The notes under the pieces were generated by a model. That model was given only the letters and a program-made list of their open reading frames with translations, made no database searches and was not told the DNA's origin. Both the position numbers and the translations under genes were made by a program. This document shows, piece after piece, positions 2,414 through 61,714 of a stretch of 64,000 nt of DNA (position 1 is the first letter of the stretch; each line of letters begins with the position of its first letter). The stretch is from Chrysemys picta bellii. Lineage: Eukaryota. The stretch is from contig NC_088793.1 in assembly GCF_011386835.1 (NCBI RefSeq), forward strand, positions 201,066,001 to 201,130,000, in the 5' to 3' direction.

Positions 2414-3512
2414 ATATGCAGTGTTGTTGTAGCCGTGCCGGTCCCAGGATATTAGAGAGACAAAGTGGGTGAGGTAATATCTTTTATTGGACCAATTTCT
2501 GTTTTGTGAGAGAGACGAGCTTACACAGAGCTCGTCAGGTCTGGAAAAGGTACTCAGAGGGTCACAGCTAAATACAAGGTGGACCAGATTGTTTAGCATA
2601 AGTAGTTAACATGTATTTCTAGGGATTATTCAAGGTGAAGCGGCTCATTAACACCCCTCTACTCATAGGTGGGAAAGAACAAAATTTTTTTTTCCTGAAC
2701 CCGCCCTCTTCTGGCCTTCAAACAAACCCCCAACCTCTCAAAGCTCATCATCAGAAGCAAGCTCCCCACACATCAGGACACCAACTCAAAGCGGCACCAG
2801 ACCCTGCCAAAACAGATGCAAAACCTGCAGATGTACCTTCACTGCTACAATGATCAACACTCCCCTCCCCCGCCATACACTTTTCAAAATCCCTGGGTCC
2901 TATAAATGCCTGTCACAACATGTGGTGTGCCTCATCCAGTGCCCTAAATGCCCCAATCACACTTACTGTGTGCAACCACACAAGCACTACTCTCTTGAAT
3001 GAACTTACACAGGAAAATGATTAAAAAAAAAAAAACAAAAAAAAACAAAACACCCTATCACCTGGGGGTGAACACTTTTCACAAAGTGATCACTCTCTCT
3101 CTGACCTGTCAGTCCTCCTCCTCACAGGAAACTTGAGCAACACTTTCAATGGCAGCTTAAATTCATAGCTCTGCTAGACACTTAAAAATCATGGACTGAC
3201 ACTGGATTTATCGCTTATTACAACAATCTATAACCCATAAAAACCTCGTGCCCCTCCCCCAGCTGCCTTTCCCTCCCCTTCCTTTCCCACCTATAGCTGG
3301 AGGGGTGTTAATGGGCCACTTCCCCTTAAATGGGCCCTTGAAATACATGTTATCTACTTAAGCTAAACTATCTCTTCCACCTTGTATTTAGCTGTGACAC
3401 TGCATTTCCCAGACCTGAAGAAGAGCTCTGTGTCAGTTCGAAAGCTTGTGTCTCTCTCATCAACAGAGGTTGGTCCAGGGTAAGATATTATCTCACGCAG
3501 CTTGTCTCTCTA
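2414..3512. mobile_element. Penelope-like element (family B): minus-strand terminal repeat (2414-~2670) plus inverted plus-strand body with GIY-YIG endonuclease remnant and terminal repeat
   Basis: 2700-3235 (+), with frameshifts, gives PCQNRCKTC...GSYKCLSQHVVCLIQCPKCP...GEHFSQSDHSLSDLSVL...LKFIALLDT, the PLE GIY-YIG C-terminal region. 3330-3512 is the reverse complement of 2453-2650. Confidence 0.85.
3411..3451 (+). ncRNA. Minimal type I hammerhead-ribozyme motif in Penelope terminal repeat (family B; stem I disrupted by a GT insertion)
   Basis: AGAC-CTGAAGA-A-GAGC(TCTGTGTCA)GTTC-GAAA-GC-TT-GT[GT]CT: core boxes, a 4-bp stem II and a palindromic AAGCTT at stem III. Confidence 0.6.
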
Positions 3513-3544
3513 TTTTTAATGACTGTTTTATATTGCTAAAAACC

Positions 3545-7102: not shown

Positions 7103-7898
7103 TGGGTGAGCTGACTTTCCCATATCTTGGAAGCCACCTCTCACAGACAGCTGACAATGACGAAAAAATTCAGTGCCAGCTCAAATGTGCTAGCTGAGCT
7201 CTTGGTTGTCTGATAAAAGACTATTTGAAGATTGCGACATCAGAATTAAAACCAAACTTATGGTTTACAAAACTGTTGTGATTCCCACCCTATTGTTGGG
7301 GGCTGAAAGGTGGACAACATATAGAAGACATCCTAAGGCTGTGGAGAAGTATCATCAACACTGTATGCATACGATTCTTCAAATTAAATGGGCTGATAGA
7401 TACACTAACATCTGCATCCTCTCGCAAGTTGATATCACGAGCATTGATGCGATGATTATCTATCAGCAACTTTGCTGTGCAGGTCTTATTGTTTTGGCAG
7501 TCTGGAATCAGGCATCCAAACAAGTTTTCTACTCTCAACTCTGCCAAGGCAAACGTGCTAGAGGAGAACTGAAAAAAATGCTACAGAGATGTCCCTAAGG
7601 CTAATCTGAGGAAATGCAACATTGACATCAACTCGTGGGACTGTGTAGTCCAGGACCGACAACAATGGAAGAACTGCTTGAGGTGGGGAACTGAGCACTT
7701 TGAGAACCAGATGTGATTACATGTAATGGAAAAATGGGAGCGACAGAGCGCACCATGGCTCAAACCAACATCACAGGTTCACCCACCCTGCTCGGAAATA
7801 TGTGTCTGCAATGTGGCAGAGTATGTGGCTCTTGAGAATAAGCTTGGTCTTCAGCGGACTCATGGAAACTTGAAATGGACAATCCATGAAAGACAATC
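7103..7898 (+). mobile_element. RTE LINE 3' segment (YLGS motif to C-terminal zinc-finger remnant)
   Basis: FPYLGSHLS...KRLFEDCDIRIKTKLMVYKTVVIPTLLLGAERWT (ORF 7206-7598), with CLQCGRVCGS near 7802. Confidence 0.9.
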
Positions 7899-13676: not shown

Positions 13677-15094
13677 TATGATTCAATGGGATGTAGATTA
13701 GGTCCTAGTTTCCATCAACCTGATTAACCTATATTTTTTTACACCAGAAAGACACATATGCAGACAAGAGCTCATGGGCCGGAGCCAAAGGTGTGGGCCT
13801 TTATAGCCTTTTCCTCTGTTCACCCCTTTGTCTCTGGCGCTCTGGGTCACAAAGGCCTTTTAAATCCAGAAGCTGCTTCTGGGAGAAGTTGGACAGTGTC
13901 ATGAGAGGAAATGAGCTCTCCCATGGCTGTCGGTGAAGACAACCACAAATAAGGCAAATGCTGCAAAGGAAAAATGCCCAGCTAGAAAAACTCTCACTTC
14001 CCGGCCAAAACCCTGGTGGAGTTCCCCAAAATCGATGTTAGTGCAATACACATTATCCCACAAAGTGTCCCTTGCTCACTCCCTACTTGCGCCAGCTGAA
14101 TGCTGATAATCTTCTCTTCTACTTTGCCTCTTTTCCTTCTCTTCCTATCCTCTTTGTTGCCAAACACTTCACCCAAGATTGAGGAAGATATCACACAAAA
14201 GGAAAGAACTTGCTGCTTCTACAGCCTACATGTACAGGGGAGGGAGAGCATCAAAAGGGATGCATGTCCTGCTAAAGGCAGACATACAGGTTGTTAGAAC
14301 ACAGGAGGAAGAGCAGGAAAAGTAGCTGAAGTGAGACAGAGTGAAGGAAAGAAATGCTAGGAGAGGAGAGAGAGTAGAAGAAAATCCAGGGAAATTAAAG
14401 CCCAAACCTCTGGTTCTTCAGGGCAAGTAGGAAGGAAACCTCGACCGTGTCCATTGGCTTATTGTAGTTTTGCCTAGGAGACTTTCAGAATAGAGATGGG
14501 CATATAGCTGGATTTTACTGGGTAAGGTCCTTGCACACCACCTATAGACACACGATGAGAGCAACCGCACGGCATGGAGAATTAATAATAGGTCCTCAAA
14601 GCAGCTGTAAGCTCCCCCTGGGACAATGGCACAGAGGTCCTCACCAACAAGCTTCGAGCCAGCTTATGCATGGTCACAGTAACCCCCAGTGCAGGTGCGG
14701 GAGGAGGCATGTATCTATGCCCTGGCTGTTTCCCGATTAATCTAGTCTGCAGTGGGAGGGGGAGGGCTGTTCCTCCTAGGACAGAATGCCCTTGGTCCCT
14801 GCTTCAGCCTCAGTGATGGAAGTATTCCCACAACCAGCCACTGAGGTCACTTTTCCCCAGGTCCCCAACCAAAGGATAACTACAGTTCAGATTGCTGCTA
14901 GCTCTCTCCCTTTTTTGGAGTTCACACGCTTGCTGGCAGGACTCTTTCCTGCTGTGATGCTGCAAAAATCTCAACGCTGCGGTGAGGCAGCTGGAGGGCC
15001 GTGACCGCTGTTTTTCATGCTGACCACTATCGTTTCATTGCTCTGTGTGCTCCTCCCAGTCGGTTGTTGTGTCTGTCGGTTGTCTACAGCCTTA

Positions 15095-49590: not shown

Positions 49591-50382
49591 CTACAGAGCA
49601 AAGCAAGACAATGGACTAAATTCCGTCCCATTCTCTCAACTCTGCAGCTTGATACAAGAATCCTTCTGCTGATCTACTCACATCTTGACCAGAGGTTAGA
49701 TTGACCTAACCATGGTGCTCAGGGTGTGAAACTTGTCTCAGCCCTGAGTGATGTAGCTAGGTTGACCCAATTTAAGTGTAGACTGGCCCTTATTCACTAC
49801 ATGGAATCTGAAGGCCCTAATACGGGCTTGTGTTCATAGGCGCCGACTCCATGGCTGCTCCGTGGCTGGAGCACATGGAGTAAATGGTGCAGCAAGAGAA
49901 GACTCTTCTAGCATGCTGGAGAAAGTCGATTGCTTCGCAGGGCCCCCAGCTTTCCGGCTGTAACTTTCATCGGCCTCACTTCTATCTATAAGAACATATC
50001 GGGGAGGTGCAGTTAGGTGCTTTTGGAGGAGCAGCATTGCAACTATGATCCTGGGGCACCAGTCCCCTTTGAAAGGCAGAGACTTGTGCTCCTGAATCAC
50101 TCAGGTGTTTTTAAAAATCCCACCCTGATTCCATAAGTGTGCACCTTTTAAAGGAGAATCTATCCAAGGAAAATCGCCTTCTTTTGGCTAATGTGATTTA
50201 AGGCCAGATTCATAAAAGCACTTAGGCATTGCAATGCCTAATCCGCAAGTGTTCTTGACGCCCAAGGGGATTATCAGCCCCCCAGAAGATGCCCAGGCAC
50301 CCCATTCAATGCAGGGCAGAGTTAGCCACCTAGGAAAAATGAGAAGTCCTTGTGGCACCTTAGAAACTAACAAATGTATTTG

Positions 50383-50422
50383 GCATAAGCTTTCGTGGGC
50401 TAAAACCTACTTCATCAGATGC
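50383..50422 (-). ncRNA. Minimal type I hammerhead-ribozyme motif (family A Penelope)
   Basis: The minus strand reads GCAT-CTGATGA-A-GTAGG(TTTTAG)CCCAC-GAAA-GC-TT-ATGC: canonical CUGAUGA/GAAA core, stem I GCAU/AUGC, and one A.C mismatch in stem II. Confidence 0.72.
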
Positions 50423-50816
50423 ATGGAGTGGAAAATACCAGAGGCAGGTATAAATACACCTCACATGAAAAGATGGGAGTTGCCTTACCAAGTGTGGGGT
50501 CAGTGCTAATGAGCCAATTCAATTAAGGTGGAAGTGGGCTATTCTCAACAGTTGACAAGAAGGGGTGAATACCGAGGGAGGAAAAATCACTTTTGTGATG
50601 CTAATGAGGCCAATGTAATCAAGGTGGCCCATTTCAAACAGTTGACAAGAAGGGATGAGTATCAGCAGGGGGGAATTAGTTTTTGTAGTGACCCATCCAC
50701 TCCCAGTCTTTATTCAGGCCTAATTTGATAATGTCCAGTTTGTAGATTAATCCAGTTCTGCAGTTTCTTGTTGGAATCATTGGCGCTTCTGGCCAGATAA
50801 ATTTGTTAGTCTCTAA

Positions 50817-51081
50817 GGCCTGGTCTACACTGGGGGAGGATTGATCTAAGTTATGCAAAGTCGACGTACTTAGATCGACTTACCGTGGTGTCTTCACTGC
50901 AGTAGGTTGACTGCTGCCGCTCCCCTGTTGACTCTGCCTGTGCTTCTCGCCGAGCCGGAGTACAGGAGTTGACGGGAGAGCGCTCAGGAGTCGATTTATC
51001 GTGTCTAGACTAGACGCGATAAATCGACCGCCGCTGGATCGATCACTGCCCACCGATCCGGCGGGTAGTGTAGACATACCC
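50817..51081. mobile_element. PIF/Harbinger-like CpG-rich MITE (copy 3) nested in Penelope terminal repeat
   Basis: TIRs GGCCTGGTCTACACT/AGTGTAGACATACCC. TSD TAA at 50814-50816 and 51082-51084, the canonical PIF/Harbinger TWA target. Confidence 0.88.
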
Positions 51082-54000
51082 TAAAGTGCTACAAGGACTC
51101 CTCATTGTTTTTGCTGATACAGACTAACACAGCTACCATTCTGAAACCTGCCACCTAGGAAAGGGATTCTGAGAGCTAGTAAGATAAGTGGGGAGCTGCC
51201 TACATTAGCCAGGGAGTGACATACAGAGGAAAGGGCTGGTCCGAGTTAGGTGCCTAAATATTTTTGAGGATCTGAGCCAAAATCCCTTTCGTGAATTGGG
51301 TATTACAAATATTTGACCCCTTGTTGGGCTATCTGACTGGCATCAGGGTGGTCTCTTAAAGCACATGAAGAGCTCCGGTGCATCAGTTTTTGCATCCTCT
51401 TCTATAAACGTTCACCTGGAATCACAACATTCTTTTTGTAAGTGTTAGACCACAGCGTTCATTCCATATGGTTTTACGTGCCCAGATTCCAGCTGAATTA
51501 AGGTTCCTTTTCTGTGTTGGAGCAATTAATCTTATTTGTTCAATATCAACACCTGGTCAGTGACAGCTTCCCCCACTTCCTGACACAAGTTATTTATTTA
51601 TCGAGGTTATATTGTATTTTGTAGCCAAACCTACCTTTGAAAGCTTGCTACAGCGAAGCCAAATAAATCAATAGTTCGTTCAGCAGCACCAGTAATCTGG
51701 TTAATAAAACAAATTTTTATAAATTTGTCATGGACCTTAAAAGGACTGCCAGAACATTTTAAATCCAAAGTCACTCACTTTTGGGGAGGGGGGAGGGCTG
51801 TTTTCACGTTTTGTGCATCTGTAGCAGGTGGCTGCAACACCCCAGCAGGGTTTAATTCTTCATAAGATGGTAAATATACAATGGTCCCCAAAACAAGCAG
51901 TAAGTCTGCTGCCCAGATGGCAACATCCTGTGTAAGCTGCCAAATTCACTTCTGTAAAACAATTTATAGTCTTTAAGTGAATGACTGTAAATAAGGCAGT
52001 AACCATGAAATGACCTGCCCTTTTCTTTACTATAAAGAAAATAACATTTACGTTTTTTTAATCTACATATCAAACTGTACTACCTTAACTAGCCCTGTAC
52101 TAGCAGTGCTTTCCCCCTAGTGTGAACACCTACACCAGTATTGCTTACTCCCACAAGGCAAACTGGGTGATGACTACCTAGAGGAGTTGAGACCAGAGGA
52201 GGACTCAGGTTTGCTGGGAATGCCTGAGACTGGTGAGGGGGTGTCATCTACAGAATTGCTGGACCAAGAGACTGGGGGAAGTGTTGCCCTGCCCCAGAGG
52301 TAGCCCTGGTTGTGGAGAAAAATTGCTCGCCCTGGAGAGAGAGAAGCCTCCTCCTGGTTATTGAAAAGACTACATCCACCCTATAAACTTACAGGGGAGC
52401 AATGTAGTAGAGTGGCCATCAAATGGTTAACTGGGTTACTGAGAGGATTATGGGTTGGAGCCAGGCTCCACCCTTCCCTTTTTGTCCTGTTTTGTTAGTG
52501 AGAGGTCACCCAGTCTGTGATGCAGTAAGTTCTCAGCCTGCAGCCCTGGGAGTAGACTTCTTTTGTAAAGGGACTGCTTGGTGCAACATAAATAAGGGGA
52601 ATAAGCTGTAACATTATGAAGCCTCTTTATACTGATATAACTGCACCCACACTAGGATTCACTGCTCTAACTGCATAGGTTAAAAATTCATCCTCCCTAA
52701 CAAAGCAGCTATCCTTGTACGAAACCTGTGTACAGCAGGTGGCAGGAAAGTGAAATAAAAGAGAGCAGAGGAGGAAATGCATTTGTAATCCTAAGAAAAA
52801 ACAGGATTATGCTTCACTTTGCATTCAGTGGTTAAGGCCTTGGCTTCTTGACCTGCTAATGACAATAAATACATAAAACTGAAGCATCATCTCTTTAGGA
52901 GAAACGCCTCTTGTATTCACGGTGTCCTTATACAAACCCTCAGGGGCCCCTCCAAAGCCCATTGGAGTAAATGGAAAGACTCCTGATGACTTGAATGGGG
53001 GTTGGATCAGGCTTTTGGGTGGCTGCTACACCCAGCCCAAGCAATGGTTTAGAGCAGAAGGTTAATTGCCAGGTGGGGGACGTGGGGATGAAATTCAGGG
53101 CTGTAATACATCCTTTCTGTGGCTGCTACTGCCGCCCATACTGGTATAGTGGCCTCTGCCACTCCAAACATACTGCATAGCTATCTTTTAGCTCCTGTTC
53201 CAACATAGTCATGCATCTTCAGCCTCCCCCTTCAGCCAGCCATCTAGGCTGCTAGGTAGCTGATCCACCCATAGGCCTCTTGCACATCACCATGGGGTTT
53301 CACTGGAGCAGTAGGTCATAAGCCATACCTTGCTACCTCACTCTGGGGGCTCATCCTGGAAGTCCTAGTGTGTCTATCATGCAAGGATAGACATCCTCAT
53401 GGGGTTTGGCTGCTGACCCAGTGCCAATTGAACGGCAGTCTTTCCCTTGGCTTCAGTCAGGACTGGACCGAGCTCATGAATTGCTGGATCAGGCCCACAA
53501 CATCGACAGCAAAATCTCAAGCGCAGACCGCCATAAACCTGAAACAACTTAAACTAGTGACACAGAAAGAACCCAGGCTGTGGTAGTTCCCCAAGGCTGT
53601 TAATATCTGAATAGCTCTAGTGTTATCTCTTCCCAATGCTCTACCGCCTGCTCTGTTCATACTCTTCCATTTTTCCGCTGAGCGGCTGGGCCTAACCAAC
53701 AGGGTTTCATTTTAATTTCTCAACAGGGTTTTTTTTTTCCCCCCCCCTTTCTTGAAAAATGACTGAAACTAGAAGGATTTTCCAGCTGGAAAATCCAACC
53801 CGTCTGGTTGGATCCAGTCAGAATTTCCAACTAACACCTGTATTTCTATAACGTTTTGGCCATGCTATATGACTGGAAAGAAGTAGGGGGGGATGAGGGG
53901 GGTAACCACTTGAGATTATCTATATCTAGATATATATTAGGGGAGGAAGAAAACACGCACTGTCCTGCCCTGCATTTTCTCTCTGACCTAAGCACCCTTT

Positions 54001-58251: not shown

Positions 58252-58990
58252 TGTATGCAGTGTTGTTGTAGCCATGTTGGTCCCAGGATATTAGAGAGAA
58301 GATAAGTGAGATCATATCTCTCACTGGACCAACTTCTATCTGTGAGTGAGACAAACTTTTGAGCTACATAGAGCTCTTCCTCACTCAGAGTGTCACAGCT
58401 AAATACAAGGTTGAACAGATTGTTTAGTATAAGTAGTTAGCACATATTCTAAGGGACCATTCAAGGTGAAGTGACTTAACACTTCTGCAGTCATAGGGCA
58501 AAAGGGGGGGGGGGATTAGTGGGTTACAGATTGTTGTAATAAGCCACAAATCCAGTGTCTTTATTAAAGCCATGATTTTTAGTGTCGAGCTAAGTTATGA
58601 ATTTAAGCTCCCAGGCTTGACTGTTGAAAGTGTTTTTCACGTTTCCTTTGAGGATGAGGACTGAGAGGTCCGATACAGAGTGATTGCTTTGTGAAAAGTG
58701 TTCACCCACAGGTGATGGGGTGGTTTAGTTTTTTGTTTTTATCATTTTCCAGTGTGAGTTCATTCAGGAGCATTGTGATTGTCTGGTTTCACCCACTAGT
58801 TGTAGTTGGGGCATTTAGTGTGCTGGATGAGGTACACCACATGTCGTGATAGGCATGTAGGACCCATGGATCTTGAAAGGTGTTTTGTCAGGGGTGCTGA
58901 TCATTGTAGTCATGGAGAGATGTTTGTTGAGCTTGCAGGGTCTGGTACCACTTTGAGTTGGTGTGTCCTGGTCTGTGAGAACTTGCCTCT
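58252..58990 (-). mobile_element. Penelope-like element (family B), 5'-truncated, GIY-YIG remnant plus terminal repeat
   Basis: Homologous to 2414-3512. The minus strand encodes HVVYLIQHTKCPNYN...GEHFSQSNHSVSDLSVLILKGN. The hammerhead region (~58340-58385) is degenerate. Confidence 0.85.
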
Positions 58991-60040: not shown

Positions 60041-60155
60041 TAGGGTGACCAGATAGCAAGTGTGAAAAATTGGGACGGGGTGGGGGATAATAGGCGCCTA
60101 TATAAAACAAAGCCCCAAATATTGGGGACTGTCCCTATAAAATCGGGACACACTA
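60041..60155. mobile_element. hAT-Blackjack-like MITE nested in RTE; right TIR partly deleted
   Basis: Left TIR TAGGGTGACCAGA. Perfect TSD GCTAGAGT at 60033-60040 and 60156-60163. Confidence 0.88.
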
Positions 60156-60193
60156 GCTAGAGTGCTGGAAAATGGTGCTTCAGTAGAGCTATT

Positions 60194-60437
60194 AGAAGAA
60201 CAGGAGTACTTGTGGCACCTTAGAGACTAACAAATTTATTAGAGCATAAGCTTTTGTGGACTATAGCCCACTTCTTCGGATGCATATAGAATGGAACATA
60301 TATATGCATCCGAAGAAGTGGGCTGTAGTCCACGAAAGCTTATGCTCTAATAAATTTGTTAGTCTCTAAGGTGCCACAAGTACTCCTGTTCTTCTTTTTG
60401 CGGATACAGACTAACACGGCTGCTACTCTGAAACCTG
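60194..60437. mobile_element. Short Penelope (family A) insertion: 95-bp inverted repeat plus 42-nt tail
   Basis: Arms 60194-60288 and 60301-60395 have 2 mismatches. 14-bp TSD TCAGTAGAGCTATT at 60180-60193 and 60438-60451. Confidence 0.92.
60306..60345 (+). ncRNA. Minimal type I hammerhead-ribozyme motif (family A Penelope, CCGA core variant)
   Basis: GCAT-CCGAAGA-A-GTGGGC(TGTA)GTCCAC-GAAA-GC-TT-ATGC. Predicted cleavage is after U60341. The mirror copy on the minus strand (60244-60283) has GAAA changed to AAAA. Confidence 0.68.
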
Positions 60438-61714
60438 TCAGTAGAGCTATTCTTTGTCATGAATGGCATTAAGCAGGGCTTTGTGATTGCACCTAAACTG
60501 TTTCCCATTCTCTTTGGTGCTATGTTGCTAGAGACTTTCAAAGACCGCAACCAGTGTATTTACACACATCGCAGTGTCTTTGTGCTCACACTGAAGTGAC
60601 CTCCTTGCTCATTGGGACATTCCTCTTTGCTGACAATGATGGATTTGTAGCACATACCTTGAAGACAGGCAGCATCTAATCAACTGCTTTTCTAGATTGG
60701 CAAACTGATTTGGACTCTTTGTCAGTCTCAAGAAAACTGAAGCGCTTTACCAGGAAAAATGTATTCTGCCCCTGAAATCCCAATTGATGACACACTGCTT
60801 AATGTGGTAGAACATTTTTGCTGTGTTGGGTAACAATGCCATGACTGATGATAAAATTGTGCAGAGCGTTCCTTGATCCAGTTCTGCCTATGGCCGACTT
60901 TGTCGCCACCTCTGTAACGTGAGAAGCATTTGACTTCACGCCAAGATCAATGACTATCATGCAATCATGACTATCCTGCACTCTTCTCTGTGGCTGTGAA
61001 ACATGGGCAATTGAGGCAACATGAGCATTTTCACATGCACTGTATGCATCTCATCTGTAACATCAAGTGGTTGGACAGGATACCAAATATCAAAGTCCTG
61101 GACTGGTGTTGCATGACTAACCATGAATCCCTAATCATGCAGGCACAATTTCATTGGGCGGGTCCTTGTATGTATGGATGATACGCGACTCCCCAAAGCC
61201 ATATTTTATGGACACTTGAAAATGGGAGCACCATATTCCGGTGCCAATGACAGCAATATAGGGATATTCTTGGAACTCAACAAAAAGTCGACCCGAACAC
61301 CTGGGCAGCTGCTGCCGTCGATAGCTCGGGTTGGTGGCTTAACTTTTGGCAGTGGTTACAGCCATCAAGAATAGCAGTACAGAAAAAGCCAAAGAGAAGC
61401 ATGAGTGAAGACAGCAGGCTGTGGCAAAAACCTGTGGCCATGTCTGTCTGAGGTGCAGACGCATCTGTGCATCCCTCATCGGTTTACATTCGCACAAGAC
61501 GACGCACTGAAACAAACTGATGCTCATACGTCGTCTATGATGGGAGACGCCAGCAGGGGTGGGATTTTCGACAGCACTCCGCTTCACCTTTTCTCTGCTC
61601 TGAGTTTTGCCAGTGACTTCACAGGGAGCTGGATTAGGTCGATGCTGAATGCTTTCAGGACGCCCACCATTGCTGTGGTGTGTTAATGACAACATGGTTG
61701 GAGAGGGCGCACGT

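What the first reader, a model, noticed from the sequence alone, without database searches (positions are those of the whole stretch)
60306..60345. Hammerhead ribozyme motifs in Penelope terminal repeats, supported by covariation between two families
Family A (60306-60345 + and 50383-50422 -) and family B (3411-3451 +) share no primary sequence in the stems but keep the same architecture: stem I, C(U/C)GANGA-A, stem II, GAAA, GC, UU, stem I. Stem I is GCAU/AUGC in A. In B it is AGAC/GUCU if the GT insertion in the 3411 copy is ignored; the degenerate 2510 copy shows GUCU directly. Stem II is GUGG..CCAC in A versus GAGC..GUUC in B. Stem III is reduced to one A-U pair around the palindrome AAGCUU. 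It is established that PLEs carry minimal type I hammerheads that can cleave as dimers through a palindromic stem III. The CUU cleavage triplet, the extra A after A9 and the CCGA core are unusual variants. Whether these turtle motifs are active is inference.
Basis: partly seen in the sequence, partly recalled or inferred. Interest (0 to 1): 0.8.

Follow-up and report, generated by a model that had tools for sequence, protein, structure and literature searches.

The report
Penelope retrotransposon minimal hammerhead motifs
The 40-base motif is a real copy of the minimal hammerhead-ribozyme motif that Penelope-like retrotransposons are already known to carry, sitting here in dead fold-back insertions where it is very unlikely to cut RNA, so it is an ordinary and already described feature.

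Summary
A descriptor for this layout found nothing in 200 shuffled windows. Between families A and B, 5 of 8 stem pairs change on both sides and 95% of cells stay paired, but these are only two independent lineages.

The Penelope context holds. All three insertions I dissected are fold-backs with intact target duplications and a one-sided 36-45 nt tail, and family B adjoins a decayed RT/GIY-YIG ORF.

This matches the min-HHR of Cervera and de la Pena 2014, which was also noted in turtles. The extra A after A9 is typical of that class, not unusual.

No copy in the window is intact. Contigs from four public runs show the CCGA core (U4 to C) is the majority state of a very abundant family. Rfam hammerhead models do not match, and cleavage could not be tested.

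This scan holds many other hammerhead notes on this genome (26 for hammerhead+Penelope).

The parts
60306..60345 (+). A1 min-HHR motif. Stem I is 60306-09/60342-45. The core CCGAAGA at 60310-16 has U4 replaced by C at 60311. Extra A at 60317; stem II 60318-23/60328-33; GAAA 60334-37; GC 60338-39; U16.1 at 60340; U17 at 60341. Predicted cut after 60341.
60244..60283 (-). Twin of A1 on the opposite strand, with the same U4C and also G12 replaced by A (AAAA instead of GAAA).
60194..60438 (.). Minimal fold-back PLE insertion of 245 bp. The inverted 5'-truncated copy runs 60194 to about 60299 on the minus strand and the plus copy about 60300-60438. The 95-nt arms are 60194-60288 and 60301-60395. 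Flanked by a 13-bp target duplication CAGTAGAGCTATT at 60181-60193 and 60439-60451.
60396..60438 (+). PLE 'tail' extension present on one end only. Other genomic copies end either near 60387-60393 or near 60436-60439.
   Evidence: table 7; PMC11167929; PMC8557442
50383..50422 (-). A2 min-HHR motif with the canonical core CUGAUGA, GAAA and UU, but an A.C mismatch in stem II (GUAGG/CCCAC).
50338..51150 (.). Older fold-back PLE insertion. The minus arm carries A2. The plus arm starts about 50771-50785, is truncated inside the HHR, and is split by a roughly 270-bp MITE-like element at 50811-51080. The tail is on the plus arm. Target duplication CCACCTAGGAAA at 50326-50337 and 51151-51162.
3411..3453 (+). 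B1 min-HHR motif. AGAC 3411-14; CUGAAGA 3415-21; extra A 3422; stem II GAGCU/AGUUC 3423-27/3435-39; GAAA 3440-43; GC 3444-45; UU 3446-47; then GU-GUCU, where the GU insertion disturbs stem I. Predicted cut after 3447.
2510..2544 (-). B2, a decayed copy. Stem I and CUGACGA are kept; the 3' half of stem II and GAA are deleted; U17 is replaced by C.
58346..58381 (-). B3, a decayed copy. The stem I 5' strand and C3-G5 are deleted. Stem II GAGCU/AGCUC is perfect. It has AAAA for GAAA and GUUU for GCUU.
2414..3512 (.). Family B fold-back PLE insertion. The inverted arm 2414-2677 on the minus strand carries the tail at 2414-2452. The plus copy runs about 2680-3512. Target duplication TTTTTAAT at 2406-2413 and 3513-3520.
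2682..2999 (+). Decayed remnant of the PLE ORF: the linker with a CxxC cluster and the start of the GIY-YIG endonuclease (...CLSQHVVCLIQCPKCPNHTY...). Further broken pieces run to about 3230.

Best explanation
These are genomic copies of the minimal type-I hammerhead motif (min-HHR) that Penelope-like retrotransposons (PLEs) carry in their pseudo-LTR, about 50-100 nt upstream of the sites where reverse transcription starts. PLE insertions are 5'-truncated, so almost every copy keeps the 3' end and the motif is scattered through the genome in very large numbers.

In a transcript of a source element, helix I (4 bp) and helix II (5-6 bp) form within one molecule. Helix III cannot form within one molecule, because A15.1-G-C-U16.1 has no loop. 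The palindrome AGCU must instead pair with the same tetranucleotide of a second motif, giving a dimer that would cut after U17. Published work suggests this also needs help from the element's protein.

At the loci in this window the motifs are dead passengers. Every copy has a lesion: U4C, G12A, a stem II mismatch, a stem I insertion, or a deletion. The insertions are fold-backs that pair the sense motif with its antisense twin.

Shown here: the motif, its non-chance architecture, the compensatory stem changes between families, the PLE hallmarks, and the family-wide C at position 4. Inferred: dimer formation, cleavage after U17, and lack of function at these loci.
For: - Motif anatomy was read directly.
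- The descriptor found 0 hits in 200 shuffles.
- 95% of cells are paired and 5 of 8 pairs change on both sides between A and B, against 21-48% pairing in slid controls.
- The features listed for PLE min-HHRs are all present: an unpaired nucleotide after A9, G10.1-C11.1, a long helix II, a short open helix I and a palindromic 15.2-16.2 (PMC4209133). That paper also mentions turtle and snakes.
- PLE hallmarks: three fold-back insertions with intact 8-13 bp target duplications and a tail on one end only, as described in PMC8557442 and PMC11167929.
- Loose ends of other genomic copies cluster at two sites about 45 nt apart.
- The ORF remnant next to B1 has 9 relatives at E<=1e-3, the best at 4.5e-11. 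One of them carries RVT_1 upstream of the matched part and another carries GIY-YIG over its end. The alignment shows the ...VIYLIQCTKCP..YVGET... endonuclease block.
- About 32,000 contig pieces per run lie on the 145-nt stretch.
Against: - No Rfam hammerhead model matches any copy, even at E<=10 on stretches of 66-401 nt.
- No copy in the window has both an intact core and intact stems.
- The dominant A family has C at the normally invariant U4.
- Thermodynamic folding in sequence context gives stem I a probability of 0 in every copy, and supports stem II only for A1 without its inverted arm.
- The Pfam hits on the ORF relatives are below the gathering scores (20.1 vs 22.6; 27.2 vs 29.6). The window's own ORF pieces give no Pfam hit.
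- Family A has no ORF in the window, so its PLE label rests on the tail and fold-back signature and on the motif itself.
- No cleavage data exist for these sequences.
Confidence: 0.85

Rival explanations
1. The C4 (CCGA) hammerhead of the abundant A family is still a working ribozyme, perhaps protein-assisted, and is kept by selection in the source elements.
For: - C at 60311 has no alternative letter at 5% or more in four runs from three coded organisms.
- The 40-nt motif shows only two variable sites, both CpG transitions. The next 40 nt show seven non-CpG variable sites (Fisher p=0.012 for non-CpG sites, post hoc).
- A U4C viroid hammerhead is much weaker in vitro but is still viable in vivo (PMC3088659).
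- The anole PLE hammerhead cuts only when the element's protein is added (PMC11167929).
Against: - U4 is among the strictly conserved core positions, and core mutations generally cause a drastic loss of activity (PMC3088659).
- PLE min-HHRs are already poorly active even with a canonical core (PMC4209133).
- The low variation in the motif may reflect the youth of the family, or edge effects near the 5' end of the laid stretch.
- Contig depth is not a count of copies.
Confidence: 0.2
2. In this lineage the conserved block is kept for a job other than self-cleavage. It could be a folded RNA element recognised by the PLE protein near the sites where reverse transcription starts, and catalysis has been lost.
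For: - The U4C change is fixed in a hugely amplified family.
- In the anole PLE, hammerhead catalytic mutants do not affect insertion in vitro, and no RNA-seq reads end at the cut site (PMC11167929).
- The stems still covary between families.
Against: - All other core positions (C3, G5, A6, G8, A9, G12-A15.1, U16.1, H17) are kept in A1 and across families. That is what is expected if catalysis is under selection.
- In the anole element the protein-binding region maps downstream, within the first 172 nt of the ORF, rather than to the hammerhead alone.
Confidence: 0.15
3. The relevant functional unit at 60194-60395 is the 95-bp perfect hairpin, as a source of small RNAs or a dsRNA trigger, and the hammerhead resemblance is incidental there.
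For: - The inverted repeat is 98% complementary.
- The whole insertion folds into one hairpin with an MFE of -181.6 kcal/mol, and the hammerhead stems get probability 0.
- Rfam miRNA-precursor models give sub-threshold matches.
Against: - The Rfam matches (62 bits against a gathering score of 100, for a moss miRNA family) only reflect the palindrome.
- Fold-back structure is a known by-product of PLE insertion (PMC8557442).
- No small-RNA data were available.
- This reading does not explain the same motif in non-palindromic copies or in family B.
Confidence: 0.05
4. The motif is a chance match to a loose hammerhead pattern.
For: Rfam hammerhead models do not match. The short pattern GAAAGCTTATGC with 2 mismatches is no more frequent than chance.
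Against: - The full descriptor found 0 hits in 200 shuffles.
- The motif recurs at the same place in two repeat families with compensatory stems.
- It has the known association with PLEs.
Confidence: 0.02

Closest known systems
min-HHR of metazoan Penelope-like elements (Cervera and de la Pena 2014, PMC4209133; dimer cleavage also reported by Lunse, Weinberg and Breaker 2017, a paper not held in the library)
   Same: Type I topology. Helix I of 4-5 bp without a defined loop. One unpaired nucleotide between A9 and 10.1. A G10.1-C11.1 pair. Helix II of 5-8 bp. No loop 3 and a palindromic 15.2-16.2 (GC). Location in the PLE terminal repeat. Many sequence families per genome with compensatory stem changes. 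Reported in turtle and snakes.
   Different: The dominant A family has C instead of U at core position 4, so the published CUGANGA descriptor would not have retrieved it. Every copy in this window is damaged. Activity was not tested.
Hammerhead of the Anolis carolinensis Poseidon element PAc (PMC11167929)
   Same: The hammerhead lies upstream of two adjacent reverse-transcription start sites that create an optional tail. The element extends both DNA strands, which fits the fold-back insertions seen here. The ribozyme is protein-assisted and dispensable for insertion in vitro.
   Different: In PAc the ORF starts at stem II and continues. Here the ATG just before A1 (60304) opens a frame that stops after 21 codons, so the stretch after the motif is non-coding in this copy. 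The tail here is 36-45 nt against 30-40 nt.
Canonical type-I hammerheads of animal tandem repeats and non-LTR retrozymes (newt satellite 2, Schistosoma Sm-alpha; PMC7229834; bioRxiv 10.64898/2026.07.22.740005)
   Same: Type I topology, a weak palindromic helix III and action as dimers. They are proposed to derive from PLE pLTRs.
   Different: Those have a 6-bp helix I and a 4-bp helix II with interacting loops, and a real helix III with a loop. They sit in head-to-tail arrays and give circular RNAs. Here there are no tandem arrays, only dispersed fold-back insertions.
Rfam hammerhead families (the type I and type III models and the HH9, HH10 and type II variants; named from my own knowledge of Rfam)
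   Same: The same catalytic core boxes.
   Different: No match at the gathering threshold, or at E<=10 on stretches of 66-401 nt. I take the cause to be the missing helix III and the minimal helix I.

Membership tests
PLE min-HHR (Cervera and de la Pena 2014) | Core boxes C3-U4-G5-A6-N7-G8-A9 and G12-A13-A14, then A15.1...U16.1-H17 | tested here: inconclusive
   Met in A2 (CUGAUGA, GAAA, UU) and B1 (CUGAAGA, GAAA, UU). Not met in A1 (C at position 4) or its twin (C4 and A12). Partly deleted in B2 and B3. C4 is the majority state of the A family.
PLE min-HHR (Cervera and de la Pena 2014) | One unpaired nucleotide between A9 and 10.1 | tested here: met
   An A is present in A1, its twin, A2 and B1.
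PLE min-HHR (Cervera and de la Pena 2014) | A G10.1-C11.1 pair closing an extended helix II (5-8 bp) | tested here: met
   G-C in 5 of 5 copies with letters at that pair. Helix II is 6 bp in A1 and 5 bp in B1 and B3. A2 has one A.C mismatch.
PLE min-HHR (Cervera and de la Pena 2014) | Short open helix I (4-5 bp) | tested here: met
   GCAU/AUGC in A and AGAC/GUCU in B (B1 has a GU insertion). Three of the 4 pairs differ on both sides between the families.
PLE min-HHR (Cervera and de la Pena 2014) | No loop 3; palindromic 15.2-16.2 allowing helix III to form between two molecules | tested here: met
   A-GC-U in A1, A2 and B1. The AGCU self-duplex is -2.5 kcal/mol on its own. Actual dimer formation was not tested.
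PLE min-HHR (Cervera and de la Pena 2014) | Lies in the terminal repeat of an element encoding an RT plus a GIY-YIG endonuclease | tested here: met
   Family B: the ORF remnant is homologous to proteins with RVT_1 and GIY-YIG matches (those Pfam scores are just under the gathering scores). Family A: only the PLE tail and fold-back signature. No ORF for family A is present in the window.
PLE min-HHR (Cervera and de la Pena 2014) | Self-cleavage after H17, as a dimer | not testable with these tools
   All available sequencing runs are held as contigs, which cannot show RNA ends.
Rfam hammerhead families | Score at or above the family gathering threshold | tested here: not met
   0 matches at the gathering threshold in the window. 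No hammerhead model matched at E<=10 on 60100-60500, 50250-50550 or 50370-50435.
Non-LTR retrozyme | Head-to-tail tandem array of short hammerhead-bearing units | tested here: not met
   No direct repeats around A1. Copies are inverted pairs or single copies.

The most novel reading that the evidence does not exclude
A very abundant Penelope-like lineage has fixed C at hammerhead core position 4. Across its subfamilies the rest of the 40-nt motif shows no substitutions at 5% or more other than two CpG changes, while the neighbouring spacer diverges. This would mean one of two things. Either a U4C hammerhead is functional in vivo, presumably with the element's protein as a chaperone. Or the conserved role of the PLE hammerhead block is not self-cleavage at all.
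Probability: 0.2. Interest if true: 0.55.

Novelty: new member of a known kind. Interest (0 to 1): 0.25.

Why it matters
It mostly confirms textbook-level knowledge for this field: Penelope-like elements scatter minimal hammerhead motifs through non-mammalian vertebrate genomes. The one point worth keeping is that the most abundant family here carries C at the normally invariant U4. A standard CUGANGA descriptor and the Rfam models both miss this family. It is also a natural test case for an open question raised by the 2024 anole work, namely whether hammerhead catalysis is needed at all for PLE propagation.

Tried and rejected
- **Rfam.** A gathering scan of the window gave 0 hits. E<=10 scans of three sub-stretches gave no hammerhead model. 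They returned only palindrome-driven miRNA-precursor matches and a weak frameshift-element match, all taken as spurious.
- **Word-indexed protein search.** The search with the 106-aa ORF remnant found no candidate.
- **Pfam on the window's own ORF pieces.** No hits. The protein-atlas search gave only lead-level clusters with HTH_animal and GIY-YIG.
- **Family-A-only model.** A covariance model built from family A alone recovers B1 only at 15 bits, E=0.25. The two families cannot be linked by that route.
- **Extra weak hits.** Those at 7832-7865(-) and 14244-14267(-) lack the PLE tail sequence and were dismissed as chance.
- **blastn.** No significant A-to-B similarity at word size 7.
- **In vivo cleavage.** Two run searches returned only contig-level runs and no raw reads, so RNA ends at the predicted cut site could not be examined.
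- **Cofolding.** Two motif copies give trivial extended duplexes. The real double-hammerhead is a crossing structure that the tool cannot represent.
- **Literature.** Lunse et al. 2017 (PMC5785218) is not held. The supplements of PMC4209133, which would show the turtle motifs, are not held either.

Full report
**1. What is in the sequence**

At 60306-60345(+) the window reads GCAU CCGAAGA A GUGGGC UGUA GUCCAC GAAA GC U U AUGC. In hammerhead numbering:
- Helix I is GCAU/AUGC.
- C3 is at 60310. Position 4 is C at 60311, where the consensus has U. G5 to A9 are 60312-60316.
- There is an extra A at 60317.
- Helix II is 6 bp, closed by G10.1-C11.1.
- G12 to A15.1 are 60334-60337, G15.2-C16.2 are 60338-60339, U16.1 is 60340 and U17 is 60341.

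The copy at 50383-50422(-) has a canonical CUGAUGA core but an A.C mismatch in helix II.

The copy at 3411-3453(+) has AGAC, CUGAAGA, an extra A, GAGCU/AGUUC, GAAA, GC and UU, followed by GU-GUCU.

The finding as given does not list a twin of A1 on the minus strand at 60244-60283. It carries AAAA instead of GAAA and lies in a 95-nt inverted repeat that is 98% complementary. It also does not list a third family-B copy at 58346-58381(-). Both that copy and the 2510-2544(-) copy are partly deleted.

**2. Is it more than chance?**

A descriptor was written for the full architecture: core box, optional bulge, G-C-closed helix II of at least 4 bp, GAAA, a palindromic 15.2-16.2, UH, and a helix I of at least 4 bp. 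It finds A1, and A2 when one helix II mismatch is allowed. It finds nothing in 200 dinucleotide-preserving shuffles of the window.

On a six-row alignment of the A and B copies:
- 95.2% of cells form standard pairs, against 21-48% when the 3' partners are slid by 1-3 columns.
- 5 of 8 pairs change on both sides: three in helix I and two in helix II.
- No shuffle out of 500 reaches the observed pairing or covariation score.

The caveat is that all these changes separate only two lineages. A covariance model built from family A alone recovers B1 at only 15 bits, E=0.25. blastn sees no A-to-B similarity. The covariation is real but thin.

**3. The context is Penelope-like**

All three insertions I dissected have the same anatomy.

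| Insertion | Span | Target duplication | Tail |
|---|---|---|---|
| A1 | 60194-60438 | 13 bp, CAGTAGAGCTATT | 43 nt on the plus arm only |
| A2 | 50338-51150 | 12 bp, CCACCTAGGAAA | on the plus arm |
| B | 2414-3512 | 8 bp, TTTTTAAT | on the minus arm |

Each is a 5'-truncated copy with an inverted, more truncated copy abutting its 5' end. This is the structure described for PLEs: an inverted 5'-truncated copy plus a 30-40 bp tail that is often present at one end only (PMC8557442). The anole work explains it by two adjacent reverse-transcription start sites and by priming on both DNA strands (PMC11167929).

Contigs of four public runs laid on 60296-60440 show other genomic copies ending at two clusters, near 60387-60393 and near 60436-60439 (table 7). 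That is the same two-end signature.

Between the family-B arms lies a decayed ORF. Its 106-aa first piece has nine relatives at E<=1e-3 among 1.84 billion representatives, the best at 4.5e-11. One relative has an RVT_1 match upstream of the aligned part, and another has a GIY-YIG match over its end (both Pfam scores are slightly below the gathering scores). The alignment shows the CxxC cluster followed by ...VIYLIQCTKCP..YVGET.... From my own knowledge this is the PLE endonuclease block.

Family A has no ORF in the window. Its PLE label rests on the tail and fold-back signature and on the motif itself.

**4. Comparison with what is known**

Cervera and de la Pena (PMC4209133) defined the min-HHR of PLE terminal repeats by these features:
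- no helix III loop, with a palindromic 15.2-16.2;
- one nucleotide between A9 and 10.1;
- a G10.1-C11.1 pair;
- a long helix II and a short helix I;
- many families per genome full of compensatory changes.

They state that similar motifs occur in turtle and snakes. The motifs here meet every structural criterion. By the NUH rule (my own knowledge) the CUU triplet is permitted, and its C follows from the G15.2-C16.2 palindrome.

The real deviation is CCGA. Rfam's hammerhead models do not match any copy. I take the cause to be the missing helix III.

**5. The U4-to-C change is family-wide**

About 32,000 contig pieces per run lie on the 145-nt stretch at 85% identity or more, in runs of coded organisms A, B and J.

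- Within the 40-nt motif, the only alternative letters reaching 5% are C>T at 60333 and G>A at 60334. These are the CpG formed by C11.1 and G12.
- Nothing reaches 5% at 60311.
- The next 40 nt hold seven variable non-CpG sites. For non-CpG sites, Fisher p=0.012. This test is post hoc, and the depths are contig depths, not copy counts.

So the dominant family carries C4. The older A2 copy and family B carry U4, so C4 is probably the derived state.

Core mutations normally cripple hammerheads. A U4C viroid variant, however, is much weaker in vitro yet still viable in vivo (PMC3088659).

In the anole PLE (PMC11167929):
- the hammerhead cuts only with the element's protein present;
- catalytic mutants do not affect insertion in vitro;
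- no RNA-seq reads end at the cut site.

Two readings remain open. C4 may be tolerated, or catalysis may be dispensable.

**6. Function at these loci**

Every copy in the window is damaged.

A transcript across the A1 insertion would fold into a single hairpin of -181.6 kcal/mol, in which the hammerhead stems have probability 0. Without the inverted arm, helix II of A1 is stable (probability 0.99). The 4-bp helix I is not predicted in any sequence context. The AGCU helix III duplex is worth only about -2.5 kcal/mol on its own.

This agrees with the published low activity of min-HHRs and their need for a dimer and a helper. These copies are passengers of retrotransposition, not working ribozymes.

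**7. Verdict**

The feature belongs to a known kind that has already been reported for turtles. This scan holds many other hammerhead notes on this genome (26 for 'hammerhead Penelope', 130 for 'hammerhead'). None of them had been followed up.

The only modestly new point is the family-wide C4 core.

I could not test cleavage, because only contig-level runs were available. I also could not confirm the organism.

Noticed in passing
window 50811-51080: A roughly 270-bp element with terminal inverted repeats (CCTGGTCTACAC... / ...GTGTAGACA) is inserted into the plus arm of the older Penelope-like fold-back. It looks like a MITE that landed after the PLE insertion.
   Followed up: no
window 60194-60395: A 95-nt perfect-hairpin palindrome with 2 mismatches. 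It draws sub-threshold Rfam miRNA-precursor matches (MIR2084, 62 bits against a gathering score of 100). These are an artefact of the palindrome, but any read-through transcript would form long dsRNA.
   Followed up: partly
window 58593-58988 (-): Frameshifted pieces of a GIY-YIG-type endonuclease ORF lie upstream of the decayed B3 hammerhead, for example ...CLSRHVVYLIQHTKCPNYN and PVGEHFSQSNHSVSDLSVLILKGN. Pfam gives no hit on the separate pieces.
   Followed up: partly
window 60396-60438, 51106-51150, 2414-2452, 58260-58300: The tails of families A and B share a short block (CACGGCT[GA]C.A) although the families are otherwise not alignable. It may mark the region where reverse transcription starts or where the endonuclease binds.
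   Followed up: no
window 60304-60366 (+): An ATG two bases before the A1 motif opens a frame of only 21 codons. In the anole PLE the ORF starts inside the hammerhead, but here the stretch after the motif is non-coding in this copy.
   Followed up: no
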